Assembly: GCA_025603075.1 (NCBI GenBank) | Contig: MU626429.1 | Span: 1 to 41,574 of the forward strand | Source of the DNA: Neoconidiobolus thromboides FSU 785 | Taxonomy: Eukaryota > Fungi > Entomophthoromycota | DNA length: 41,574 nt | Reading direction: 5' to 3' | In this document: one piece after another, positions 19,429 through 21,449 of the stretch | How positions within the stretch are numbered: position 1 is the stretch's first letter | Layout: each line of letters opens with the position of its first letter | Made by a program: the position numbers and the translations under genes | The notes under the pieces: model-generated | Told to the model about the DNA's origin: nothing | The model's database searches: none | What the model saw: only the letters and a program-made list of their open reading frames with translations

Positions 19429-21449
19429 ATGCTAACAAATATCAGTTTAACAAAAAAAGAAGACAAATTAATCAGTTTATTACTTGAATTTAGTGAAGCA
19501 ATAAATCAAGGCCAGGAAAGTAAACTGGCTATAAGGATAGTTGGAGGATGGGTTAGAGATAAAGTAAGTTTAATTTTAAGTTCATGTTTAAATTAAAAAC
19601 TAACTTATGCTTAAGTTATTAAACAGAGAGAGTGACGATATTGATTTGATGATAACTAAAATGAGAGCACTTGAGTTTATCAAGGCATTAAGCATTTATT
19701 TAAAAAATAAACAAATTGATATCACTTTTGGCATTATTAAAAGTAACGAAAATAAACTAAAGCTAATAGAATCAGCCAATTTTACTATTGACAATCTAAA
19801 GGTGGATGTTATTGATTTATTCAATTATTTGGAGCCAACTGACGACAAATCGACTGTGGTAAATACTTTATTAACTAAAGAATATATTACTGATATTGCT
19901 AGTGTGATAGTTTAATCTATGAAGATACAATGAGAAGAGATATAACTATTAATTCTTTGTATTATAACATTCATACAAAACAAATAGAAGATTTTACGAA
20001 TATGGTAAATTAAATTAAAAAGCTATAATTTTATTAACAATATTTATAAAAGGGGATCAATGACTTAAATAATAAAATCATTAGAACTTGTAGACAAGCT
20101 AAATACTTTTTTCTAAAAGATCCTTTTAGTTTGTTAAGATCCATTCGATTTTCTACTATATTACAGTTTAAATTAGATGATGATATTATCGAGGCTGCTA
20201 AAGCGGAACAGGTTAAAGTAATATTAATTCATTAGTTTTAAATAACAGATATTCAAATTGAATCAAATGTTAGGTTTTATTAAAAAATAAGATAGCAAAA
20301 GAAAGGATAGGTCGAGAAGTTAATAAAATAACTAAAAGTAAATTAAATTTAATATGCAACTATTAATCATTTATTAATGAATACTTTAAGACAAAAATTG
20401 TATTAGCGGATTTGAATTGATTCAAGAATTAGATTTATACAACACTTTATTTTGTATAAAAAGTATCCCGAGTTTAGATTCATCTTCAATCAATTTCAAT
20501 CTTATTATGGCTAAAAACATTAATTCACTAATTAAAAACGCAGTTGCCAATGAGTCAGTAAATTTATTGTTAGAAAAGTATCCTCAAATACAATCGAATT
20601 TGAATAAACTCTTATCTCCATGGTTATTATTAGCTGGTTATCTTATATCTTTTAGTAATGTTTATTTGAAATCAAATTCAACACCTAGATGTGTAGTTAA
20701 GAAAGTATTAAAGGGTGAAGTTCGAGTAATTAATATTTAATATCTTAAGCTATATAAAATAATCATCAACTTTGTTAGCTACCTCAATCTCAAGCTGTTG
20801 ATTTTATCGTTTACTTGTTCCAAGCTTACTTTCAGTTGAATCAATTATTATCATTAAATCCTGCTGAATGGACAAGATCCAATATAGGTAATATTAATAT
20901 TACTAAAACTCATATATATATATATTCCTTTACTATTTATAGGTTTATTCGTTAAAAAATATGGTGATAAATTGTATGAAACTATTTTGTTTTTGATTAG
21001 TGAGGAATTAAGTAGATTAGAAATAAACATTATAAAGCAAGGTAAGAGTTTAGTTATTATCTAATATTGAAAGTATTTATATCATTCTACTAGAGCAACT
21101 TAACTCACTTATAAGCCAAATGGGTAAATTATTAGATTTCATAAATAAGGAATCATTAGATAAAGTACATTTAATCCCGCCTATATTGAGTGTAAGGATC
21201 AAACAGATACATTGTGTTAATAGTCTAAACTTTTGGTTTTATTAGGGAGCTCAAATCCAATCCACATTACCCTTAAATCAAAGTAGATATTTAAAGGCAA
21301 TCAAACTGAAATTAGATATTCATCATTTATTAAATCCTGATATATCTCAACAACAAGCTATACTTTGGTTAAAATCTAACTTCAGCACTCAGGATCTATT
21401 AGATAATTTGGCTTCAAGTTATAATGATAGTCAACAAAATCAAATATGA
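19429..21449 (+). CDS. CCA1: tRNA nucleotidyltransferase (class II, CCA1 family), divergent, multi-exon; may be a paralog rather than the housekeeping CCA1
   Basis: Exons 19429-19563, 19616-19858, 19903-20004, 20053-20217, 20274-20337, 20391... give RIVGGWVRDK|LLNRESDDIDL, EDTMRRDITINSLYYNIHTKQIEDFT, GINDLNNKIIRT, DPFSLLRSIRF and KIAKERIGREVNK. The frame stays open through GT-AG introns to TGA at 21447-21449. Confidence 0.9.

What the first reader, a model, noticed from the sequence alone, without database searches (positions are those of the whole stretch)
19616..20217. Intact CCA-family nucleotidyltransferase with rewritten specificity determinants
The catalytic core is kept: GGWVRD, the DxD carboxylates (DDID), the VD general-base Asp and RRD. 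Two specificity elements differ. (1) The flexible loop, canonically NLRxExY..SRxP..GTPEED in fungal CCA1 and needed for terminal A addition, reads DLFNYLEPTDDKSTV|CDSLIYED, with no RxE or SRxP. (2) The amino-acid template motif E/D-D-x-x-R (yeast DDPLR), whose Asp/Arg read the CTP/ATP base edges, reads KDPFS (20116-20130) and has lost the Arg. Loop-defective class II enzymes are known CC-adding enzymes (e.g. the split CC/A system of S. pombe), but as far as I know those keep EDxxR, and template mutations are known to relax NTP specificity. The ORF is still open across canonical introns to the C-terminus. This may be a tRNA-NT paralog with a new tailing activity (CC-only, non-specific or a non-tRNA substrate), or a non-catalytic regulator.
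Basis: partly seen in the sequence, partly recalled or inferred. Interest (0 to 1): 0.78.

Follow-up and report, generated by a model that had tools for sequence, protein, structure and literature searches.

The report
Remodelled spare copy of tRNA CCA-adding enzyme
The fungus Neoconidiobolus thromboides has a normal tRNA CCA-adding enzyme plus this second, expressed, fast-evolving copy, which keeps the catalytic centre but has rewritten the parts that choose the nucleotide and add the final A, so it is a candidate for an altered RNA-tailing activity.

Summary
Window 19429-21448 (+) holds a 10-exon, 517-codon class II (eukaryotic "e-type") tRNA nucleotidyltransferase gene.

- **Expression:** all nine introns are removed in RNA-derived contigs from two studies. 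Those contigs also carry KDPFS, so it is not an assembly error.
- **Kept:** motif A (GGWVRDK, DDID), the third carboxylate (D109), ED/RRD (motif B), motif C and motif E.
- **Lost:** SKHLET is now LKLIES, the basic/acidic motif and the flexible-loop consensus are gone, and the template DDPLR is now KDPFS. Sixteen of the 19 lost conserved positions fall in these elements.
- **Partner:** the genome has exactly one other family member, on contig C452. It is fully canonical (NLRTEVYSENTRIP, DDPLR) and shares all nine intron positions and phases.
- **Rate:** the window copy groups with C452 but has a roughly 5.7-fold longer branch.
- **Selection:** a ~90%-identical variant shows about 10 synonymous and 7 non-synonymous changes in 74 codons, which indicates purifying selection.
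- **Comparison:** S. pombe CC-adding Cca1 (PDB 9ns2) keeps DDPLR.

Most likely this is a functional paralog that cannot add A76. It probably adds C only or has relaxed specificity, but the activity is untested. I class it as a new variant of a known kind, of moderate interest. The public gene model (220 aa) is truncated.

The parts
19429..19563 (+). Exon 1 (aa 1-45). It starts directly at the conserved N-terminal helix, with no presequence, and ends in motif A GGWVRDK (19543-19563).
   Evidence: The joint 19563|19616 appears in the RNA contigs. An in-frame stop lies 2 codons upstream of the ATG.
19616..19858 (+). Exon 2 (aa 46-126). Contains DDID metal carboxylates (19634-19645); LKLIES in place of SKHLET (19757-19774); the third carboxylate D109 (19805-19807); and DLFNY+LEPTDDKSTV in place of the basic/acidic motif and flexible loop (19814-19858).
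   Evidence: Weak PF01743 match for the exon alone. Syn/nonsyn count against the ~90% variant.
19903..20004 (+). Exon 3 (aa 127-160). Contains the end of the loop (CDSLIY), ED (19921-19926), motif B RRDITINS (19933-19956) and the start of motif C (EDF).
   Evidence: PF01743 33.2 bits for this exon alone. Joints confirmed.
20053..20217 (+). Exon 4 (aa 161-215). Contains motif C G..DL..IIRT, then CRQAKYFF (canonical PLxPxxTF), the template motif D KDPFS (20116-20130, canonical DDPLR), then LLRSIRF, which is retained.
   Evidence: The RNA contigs are identical here.
20274..20337 (+). Exon 5 (aa 216-237, split codon). Motif E KERIGRE (20298-20318) is retained. At 67% identity to the canonical paralog this is the best-conserved exon.
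20391..21448 (+). Exons 6-10 (20391-20725, 20779-20887, 20943-21041, 21094-21191, 21246-21448 including the TGA stop). These encode the body and tail (the tRNA-binding half). They are 31-39% identical to the canonical paralog and share its tail signature (G[AT]QIQ ... LLNP ... AI.WLK).
20218..20235 (+). Start of intron 4. The public gene model (KAI9292721.1, 220 aa) reads through it as VILIH* and so ends early.
   Evidence: The RNA contigs splice 20217|20274.

Best explanation
The window gene (W) is a functional, expressed, selectively maintained duplicate of the fungus's own e-type CCA1 gene. It has evolved about 5-6 times faster than its canonical sister copy on contig C452.

The phosphoryl-transfer machinery is kept: two-metal site, ribose/triphosphate site RRD, hinge motif C and motif E. 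The interacting elements that position the tRNA 3' end, read the base and switch from CTP to ATP have been rewritten: the SKHLET strand, the basic/acidic motif, the flexible loop and the template.

The most likely working model is an active nucleotidyltransferase that can no longer add the terminal A. It would add C only (CC-adding-like) or add nucleotides with relaxed or altered choice, to tRNA or tRNA-like 3' ends. Normal CCA synthesis, or at least A addition, would be done by the canonical copy.

- **Shown:** gene structure, expression, splicing, paralogy, asymmetric rate, the pattern of kept and lost residues, and recent purifying selection on part of exon 2.
- **Inferred:** that it is catalytically active, which nucleotide it adds, and its substrate.
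For: **Family and fold**
- PF01743 85.6 bits over the full model.
- The AlphaFold model has pLDDT 85.9, and its best PDB matches are CCA-adding enzymes.

**Expression**
- All 9 introns are spliced in contigs of four runs laid from 2 studies.

**Integrity**
- 517 open codons against 62 and 71 stops in the other frames. The window-wide stop density is 0.085 per codon.

**Paralogy**
- Only two loci exist in the 24.6-Mb genome.
- The two genes share the same 9 intron positions and phases.
- W and C are 37.6% identical (287 bits), while W scores at most 186 bits to 121 other e-type enzymes. All 121 score higher to C than to W.
- W and C form a clade with SH-aLRT 100, with branch lengths 2.94 and 0.52.

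**Selective remodelling**
- Of 60 positions conserved in at least 10 of 11 e-type heads, W keeps 36 of 39 outside the specificity elements but only 5 of 21 inside them (Fisher p=9e-8, grouping chosen post hoc).

**Purifying selection**
- A ~90%-identical variant shows about 10 synonymous and 7 non-synonymous nucleotide changes in 74 codons. The probability under neutrality is 4e-4 to 1.5e-2, depending on transition bias.
- The strain comparison shows 3 synonymous and 1 non-synonymous change.

**Literature**
- Eukaryotic CC-adding enzymes have lost or degenerated the basic/acidic motif and loop (PMC7014341).
- CC-adding enzymes often lack the first acidic template residue (PMC7947759).
- Arg-to-Ala template mutants of CCA-adding enzymes remain active, while the same change in poly(A) polymerase gives random A/C/U addition (PMC2532741).
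Against: - No enzymatic data exist.
- In vivo selection in the human enzyme never accepted replacement of the template Asp or Arg, even with Ser on offer (PMC11784652). W may therefore be a poor enzyme or inactive on tRNA.
- The SKHLET strand, which I infer aligns with the beta-turn that positions the 3' end for C as well as A addition, is also rewritten. That could abolish C addition too.
- The selection test covers only 74 codons, and the source of the variant contig is unknown (allele, extra paralog or sister species).
- No W-like ortholog was found elsewhere, so long-term conservation of KDPFS is not shown.
- The W+C clade could be helped by their shared AT-biased amino-acid composition. 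No other fungal sequences were in the tree.
Confidence: 0.5

Rival explanations
1. Split system as in Schizosaccharomyces. W would be the cell's essential CC-adding enzyme, and the canonical-looking C452 copy would be restricted to A addition. This is a special case of the best explanation in which W is indispensable.
For: - Two e-type paralogs arose by duplication, and one of them lacks the basic/acidic motif and the loop consensus. This matches the S. pombe pattern (PMC7014341).
- E-type A-adding enzymes look canonical in the catalytic core, so C452's activity cannot be read from its motifs (PMC7014341).
Against: - S. pombe Cca1 keeps KHLET, NLR and DDPLR. W has lost all of these, including the templating Arg needed for efficient C addition in vivo (PMC11784652).
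- An essential enzyme would not be expected to sit on a 5-6-fold accelerated branch.
Confidence: 0.15
2. Pseudoenzyme. W would no longer catalyse nucleotide transfer but would be kept as a tRNA/RNA-binding protein, for example a regulator, chaperone or export factor, or as a partner of the canonical enzyme.
For: - The base-reading Arg, the basic/acidic motif, the loop and the SKHLET strand are all lost.
- In vivo selection does not tolerate loss of the template Arg (PMC11784652).
- The gene is nevertheless under constraint and expressed.
Against: - All three metal carboxylates, GGWVRDK, RRD, motif C and motif E are retained despite about 60% overall divergence: 36 of 39 conserved positions outside the specificity elements.
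- A binding-only protein has no reason to keep these residues.
Confidence: 0.2
3. Decaying duplicate. W would be a redundant copy under relaxed constraint on its way to becoming a pseudogene, and the changed motifs would simply be damage.
For: - A canonical copy exists, so W is dispensable for CCA addition.
- W has a very long branch.
- No orthologs were found.
- By other first readers' unchecked notes, W lies in a region with decayed genes and MITEs.
Against: - There is no stop, frameshift or broken splice site in 517 codons and 18 splice sites, in a 26% GC genome with 0.085 stops per random codon.
- Transcripts are spliced in two studies.
- There is an excess of synonymous change.
- The losses are concentrated in one functional module rather than spread evenly.
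Confidence: 0.08
4. Still an ordinary, complete CCA-adding enzyme. W would be a redundant second copy, as in Dictyostelium, with an unusual lineage-specific loop family.
For: - Loop sequences differ strongly between lineages (PMC2910056 abstract, PMC7014341).
- Arg-to-Ala template mutants still make CCA in vitro (PMC2532741).
Against: - The same genome's canonical copy carries the normal fungal loop family (Y....TRIP) and RTE, so W's loop is not a lineage trait.
- The basic/acidic motif has no basic and no acidic residue (FNY).
- The template Arg and the first acidic residue are both gone.
Confidence: 0.05

Closest known systems
Schizosaccharomyces pombe Cca1 (CC-adding) / Cca2 (A-adding) pair (PMC7014341; PDB 9ns2-9ns4)
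   Same: - Both are fungal e-type tRNA nucleotidyltransferase paralogs created by gene duplication.
- In both, one copy has lost the basic/acidic motif and departs from the fungal loop consensus Yxxx(x)SRxP, while the other looks canonical.
   Different: - S. pombe Cca1 keeps KHLET, NLR(HH) and the template DDPLR. W has LKLIES, DLFNY and KDPFS.
- The S. pombe copies evolved at similar rates (PMC7014341), whereas W is about 5.7 times faster than its sister.
- The duplication is independent, in Entomophthoromycotina rather than Taphrinomycotina.
Acanthamoeba castellanii Ntr3 and bacterial CC-adding enzymes (PMC7947759)
   Same: All lack the basic/acidic motif, have a deleted or deviating loop, and have a non-acidic first template position (xDxxR). 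All coexist with other family members in the same genome.
   Different: Those enzymes keep the template Asp and Arg. W keeps the Asp only. Bacterial CC-adding enzymes and Ntr3 delete the loop, whereas W keeps its length but has rewritten it.
Template mutants: E. coli poly(A) polymerase R215A and CCA-adding enzyme Arg-to-Ala (PMC2532741); human enzyme template libraries (PMC11784652)
   Same: All have lost the base-reading Arg of EDxxR in an otherwise intact class II catalytic core.
   Different: Those are laboratory mutants. W is a natural, expressed gene with further changes around the pocket (P173C, T179F, L185F, first position K).
Dictyostelium discoideum CCA1/CCA2 (PMC7432833)
   Same: Both are cases of two tRNA nucleotidyltransferase genes in one eukaryote.
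   Different: Both Dictyostelium enzymes are full CCA-adding enzymes. W lacks the motifs needed for that.

Membership tests
Class II nucleotidyltransferase, PolyA_pol head domain (PF01743) | Pfam PF01743 match above the gathering score | tested here: met
   P0001 (exons 1-4) scores 85.6 bits against a cut-off of 23, over profile positions 1-126 of 126. Exon 3 alone scores 33.2 bits.
Class II nucleotidyltransferase, PolyA_pol head domain (PF01743) | Motif A GGxVRD plus DxD and a third carboxylate; motif B RRD | tested here: met
   GGWVRDK, DDID, D109 and RRDITINS are all present and align with invariant columns.
Class II nucleotidyltransferase, PolyA_pol head domain (PF01743) | Head and neck fold of class II tRNA nucleotidyltransferases | tested here: met
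   The AlphaFold2 model has pLDDT 85.9 and pTM 0.82. The best Foldseek hits are A. thaliana CCA 9kma (E 1.7e-18, TM 0.81) and T. maritima and A. aeolicus enzymes.
Class II nucleotidyltransferase, PolyA_pol head domain (PF01743) | Motif D amino-acid template E/D-D-x-x-R | tested here: not met
   W reads KDPFS at 20116-20130. The Asp is kept, but the Arg is replaced by Ser and the first acidic residue by Lys. All 11 comparison sequences have D-D/E-P-L-R.
Complete CCA-adding enzyme (eukaryotic e-type) | Basic/acidic motif (R-x-E) before the loop | tested here: not met
   W reads DLFNY where 11 of 11 others have NLRxE.
Complete CCA-adding enzyme (eukaryotic e-type) | Fungal flexible-loop consensus Yxxx(x)SRxP (PMC7014341) | tested here: not met
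   W reads LEPTDDKSTV. The canonical copy in the same genome has YSENTRIP.
Complete CCA-adding enzyme (eukaryotic e-type) | Adds C, C and A to tRNA; complements cca1 | not testable with these tools
   This needs recombinant protein or a yeast complementation test.
Eukaryotic CC-adding enzyme (S. pombe Cca1 / Acanthamoeba Ntr3 type) | Basic/acidic motif lost and loop consensus lost or deleted | tested here: met
   Criteria taken from PMC7014341 and PMC7947759.
Eukaryotic CC-adding enzyme (S. pombe Cca1 / Acanthamoeba Ntr3 type) | Template xDxxR with Asp and Arg retained | tested here: not met
   W has Ser at the Arg position. S. pombe Cca1 (9ns2) has DDPLR and Ntr3 has PDxxR (PMC7947759).
Eukaryotic CC-adding enzyme (S. 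pombe Cca1 / Acanthamoeba Ntr3 type) | A partner in the same genome able to add the terminal A | tested here: met
   The canonical paralog on C452 has all motifs. This holds at sequence level only.
Eukaryotic CC-adding enzyme (S. pombe Cca1 / Acanthamoeba Ntr3 type) | Adds two C but no A in vitro | not testable with these tools
   This needs an enzyme assay.

The most novel reading that the evidence does not exclude
W would be the first natural class II tRNA-nucleotidyltransferase-family enzyme that works without the templating arginine. It would have acquired a genuinely new nucleotide or substrate specificity, for example promiscuous or U/G-containing tails, or tailing of non-tRNA RNAs. This would have come from co-ordinated rewriting of the beta-turn strand, loop and template module, and been maintained by selection in an insect-pathogenic fungus.
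Probability: 0.2. Interest if true: 0.8.

Novelty: new variant of a known kind. Interest (0 to 1): 0.55.

Why it matters
Template-independent but sequence-specific CCA synthesis depends on a protein 'template' (EDxxR) and a loop that switches it from CTP to ATP. Natural enzymes with partial activity (CC-adding, A-adding) have been the main route to understanding that mechanism. So far every one reported in the papers read here keeps the templating Asp and Arg.

An expressed, constrained paralog that keeps the catalytic centre but has replaced the Arg, the loop, the basic/acidic motif and the neighbouring strand is a ready-made natural experiment. It could show how far the pocket can be rewritten and what other tailing activities this fold can evolve.

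It also adds an independent fungal duplication of CCA1, in Entomophthoromycotina, to the Schizosaccharomyces case. Finally, it corrects a truncated public gene model.

Tried and rejected
1. **Exhaustive phmmer with exon 2 against 1.84 billion representatives.** It returned only 7 hits at E<=1e-3. These were the truncated self model plus six canonical enzymes, with no W-like ortholog. Sensitivity with an 81-aa query is limited to roughly 35% identity or more, so absence is weak evidence.
2. **Word search with P0001, 220 aa.** The best non-self hit was 42% identical, and all aligned top hits carry canonical motifs. The length filter (121-385 aa) excludes full-length proteins.
3. **Word search with P0002.** P0002 turned out to be a non-fungal e-type enzyme. 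The top 120 hits were plants, algae and protists, so it gave no fungal set for dating the duplication.
4. **Aligning single exons to full-length scaffolds to build a profile.** MAFFT misplaced exons 1 and 6-10, so I abandoned this.
5. **Head-only tree.** It was dominated by plant sequences and was uninformative on timing.
6. **The look-up of encoding contigs for P0001.** Nothing was on record.
7. **Literature search for Conidiobolus plus tRNA nucleotidyltransferase.** No papers were found.
8. **Mitochondrial-copy idea.** Neither W nor C has an N-terminal extension or an upstream in-frame ATG in exon 1, so this has no support.
9. **Sequencing or assembly error at KDPFS.** Rejected, because independent RNA contigs agree with the genome.
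10. **The joined 517-aa protein.** Full-length database searches and a full-length fold were therefore left out.
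Full report
**1. What is there**

The window is AT-rich (about 26% GC) and comes from Neoconidiobolus thromboides FSU 785. The identification rests on the only database protein identical to the locus, KAI9292721.1 'Nucleotidyltransferase'.

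Reading the sequence and translating exon by exon gives a 10-exon gene on the + strand:

| Exon | Coordinates |
|---|---|
| 1 | 19429-19563 |
| 2 | 19616-19858 |
| 3 | 19903-20004 |
| 4 | 20053-20217 |
| 5 | 20274-20337 |
| 6 | 20391-20725 |
| 7 | 20779-20887 |
| 8 | 20943-21041 |
| 9 | 21094-21191 |
| 10 | 21246-21448 |

It encodes 517 codons ending in TGA. The nine introns are 44-56 nt long and all are GT..AG. The coding frame has no stop, while the other two sense frames of the same spliced sequence have 62 and 71. Random frames of this window carry 0.085 stops per codon.

**2. Expression and sequence confirmation**

Five public runs from two studies hold about 55% of the locus's 31-mers, which is the share expected for exon-only sequence. 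I laid the contigs of four of these runs on 19250-21650.
- All nine introns appear as clean GT..AG joints.
- No intronless copy exists in the genome, so the contigs derive from spliced RNA.
- The run of 'organism B' is identical to the window.
- The runs of 'organism A' differ at four positions, 3 synonymous and 1 non-synonymous.
- None of the contigs differs at the loop or at KDPFS, so the unusual motifs are not assembly errors and cDNA does not 'restore' them.
- One contig (X1) retains intron 2.
- The public 220-aa model equals exons 1-4 plus five codons read into intron 4, so it is truncated.

**3. Family and fold**

Exons 1-4 (P0001) match Pfam PF01743 end to end at 85.6 bits. The AlphaFold2 model is confident (pLDDT 85.9), with the only disordered stretch at residues 117-126, the loop. 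Its best structural matches are the A. thaliana, T. maritima and A. aeolicus tRNA nucleotidyltransferases. By sequence, the closest solved chains are the A. thaliana enzyme and two entries named tRNA nucleotidyltransferase cca1 and cca2 (9ns2, 9ns4).

**4. What is kept and what is lost**

I aligned the head with 11 e-type enzymes and scored the 60 positions that at least 10 of the 11 share.

W keeps:
- all 13 conserved positions of motif A (GGWVRDK, S/DDID);
- the third carboxylate D109;
- 9 of 11 positions in motif B (D134, RRD, T, N, S, Y, N);
- all 6 positions in motif C;
- LR..RF after motif D.

Motif E (KERIG.E) is kept in exon 5.

W loses 19 positions. Sixteen of them lie in five neighbouring elements:

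| Element | Canonical | W |
|---|---|---|
| SKHLET strand | SKHLET | LKLIES |
| Basic/acidic motif | NLRxE | DLFNY |
| Flexible loop | Y...SRIP..G | E...KS..S |
| Stretch before motif D | P..P..TF | C..A..FF |
| Template (motif D) | DDPLR | KDPFS |

Outside these elements W keeps 36 of 39 conserved positions. Inside them it keeps 5 of 21 (Fisher p=9e-8). The grouping was chosen after looking at the data, so I treat this as descriptive.

From my own knowledge of the human enzyme, the SKHLET strand aligns with the beta-turn (GEKHGT, site of the R99W disease variant), which positions the tRNA 3' end. This is an inference and I did not test it here. PMC11784652 describes the loop as the connector between that turn and motif D. 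On that basis, the changed pieces form one interacting module.

**5. The partner**

Searching the whole 24.6-Mb assembly with PF01743, with W exon 4, with the canonical exon 2 and with W DNA finds exactly two loci: W, and a gene on the 7.2-kb contig C452.
- The C452 gene (531 aa) is fully canonical: GGWVRDK, NDID, SKHLET, NLRTEVYSENTRIP, EFGTALEDALRRD, IRTPLP..TF, DDPLR, KERIG.E.
- It has the same nine intron positions and phases as W. Five exons are of identical length, so the duplication was DNA-based.
- W and C are 37.6% identical over 495 aa (287 bits).
- W scores at most 186 bits to 121 other full-length e-type enzymes, and every one of these scores higher to C than to W.
- In a maximum-likelihood tree, W and C are sisters (SH-aLRT 100) with terminal branches of 2.94 and 0.52.

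Two caveats apply. The tree contains no other fungi, and both proteins share an AT-driven amino-acid bias. The tree therefore shows only that W derives from the lineage's own CCA1 and evolved much faster. It does not show when. Divergence is spread over all exons, at 31-67% identity.

**6. Selection**

Two runs also hold low-depth contigs about 90% identical to parts of W, and no such copy exists in the assembly. For the exon 2 piece, the listed differences fall in 15 codons: 9 synonymous and 6 non-synonymous. All replacements are conservative (K>R, Q>E, I>T, E>D, E>Q, I>V). That is about 10 synonymous and 7 non-synonymous nucleotide changes, over 41 synonymous and 178 non-synonymous sites.

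Under neutrality, 69-80% of changes should be non-synonymous. The chance of 7 or fewer non-synonymous out of 17 is 4e-4 to 1.5e-2, depending on transition bias. This is a small sample from one exon and does not cover the loop or motif D. It does argue against a freely drifting gene.

**7. Relatives elsewhere**

- An exhaustive HMMER scan with exon 2 found only the truncated self model and six canonical enzymes.
- A word search with the 220-aa head found nothing above 42% identity, and the aligned top hits all have canonical motifs.
- The tools could not take the joined protein, so full-length orthologs in other Entomophthoromycotina cannot be excluded. The apparent restriction to this species is provisional.
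- No paper linking Conidiobolus to this enzyme family was found.

**8. Comparison with what is known**

- Eukaryotic CC-adding enzymes (S. pombe Cca1, S. rosetta) keep a loop-length segment but have lost its consensus. S. pombe Cca1 has also lost the basic/acidic motif. Restoring both gives back A addition (PMC7014341).
- CC-adding enzymes often lack the first acidic template residue, giving xDxxR (PMC7947759).
- W shares these three traits. However, the S. pombe enzyme still has KHLET, NLR and DDPLR, and W does not.
- On the Arg, the evidence points two ways. Arg-to-Ala CCA-adding enzymes still make CCA in vitro through a tRNA-dependent backup, whereas the same change in poly(A) polymerase gives random A/C/U tails (PMC2532741). 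In vivo selection on the human enzyme never accepted any replacement of the template Asp or Arg, although Ser was in the library (PMC11784652).
- E-type A-adding enzymes look canonical (PMC7014341), so the C452 copy could be either a full CCA-adding or an A-adding enzyme.

**9. Verdict**

The functional part remains inference.

My estimates are as follows (the split-system figure is a subset of the first):

| Reading | Probability |
|---|---|
| Active nucleotidyltransferase that has lost A addition and strict templating | about 0.5 |
| - of which: a true split CC/A system | about 0.15 |
| Pseudoenzyme | about 0.2 |
| Decaying copy | under 0.1 |
| Ordinary CCA-adding enzyme | about 0.05 |

This is a new variant of a known kind. 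It is worth a bench assay but is not categorically new.

- Read laying was given 2,401 letters.
- The spliced protein was searched exon by exon or through the database entry P0001.
- Exons were joined only inside local scripts.

Noticed in passing
window 20218-20235: The public gene model KAI9292721.1 (220 aa) ends by reading five codons (VILIH*) into intron 4. Spliced RNA contigs support a 517-aa, 10-exon protein, so the deposited annotation is truncated.
   Followed up: yes
window 19859-19902: One assembled transcript (run X1) retains the 44-nt intron 2, which would give a premature stop after aa 126+22. This may be a minor unspliced isoform.
   Followed up: partly
window 19627-19849 and 20369-20725: Runs X3 and X2 (organism A) hold, beside a 99.7% copy, low-depth contigs about 90% identical to exon 2 and exon 6. 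The exon 6 contig starts inside intron 5. No such copy exists in this assembly. It could be a second allele, an extra paralog in that strain, or a sister species in the samples.
   Followed up: partly
window 21449-21650 and beyond: The run X5 contig continues more than 200 nt past the stop codon and beyond the stretch laid. This suggests a long 3' UTR or read-through into the neighbouring region.
   Followed up: no
L006 (G000:C452) 3360-4200, minus strand: Directly downstream of the canonical CCA1 gene lies another multi-exon gene on the opposite strand with an acidic (D/E-rich) C-terminus. The contig is only 7.2 kb, so the canonical gene's wider context is unknown.
   Followed up: no
window 19390-19431: The leader just upstream of the ATG is an A-rich low-complexity run. 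The reads tool skipped it as a repeat, so the transcript 5' end could not be placed.
   Followed up: no
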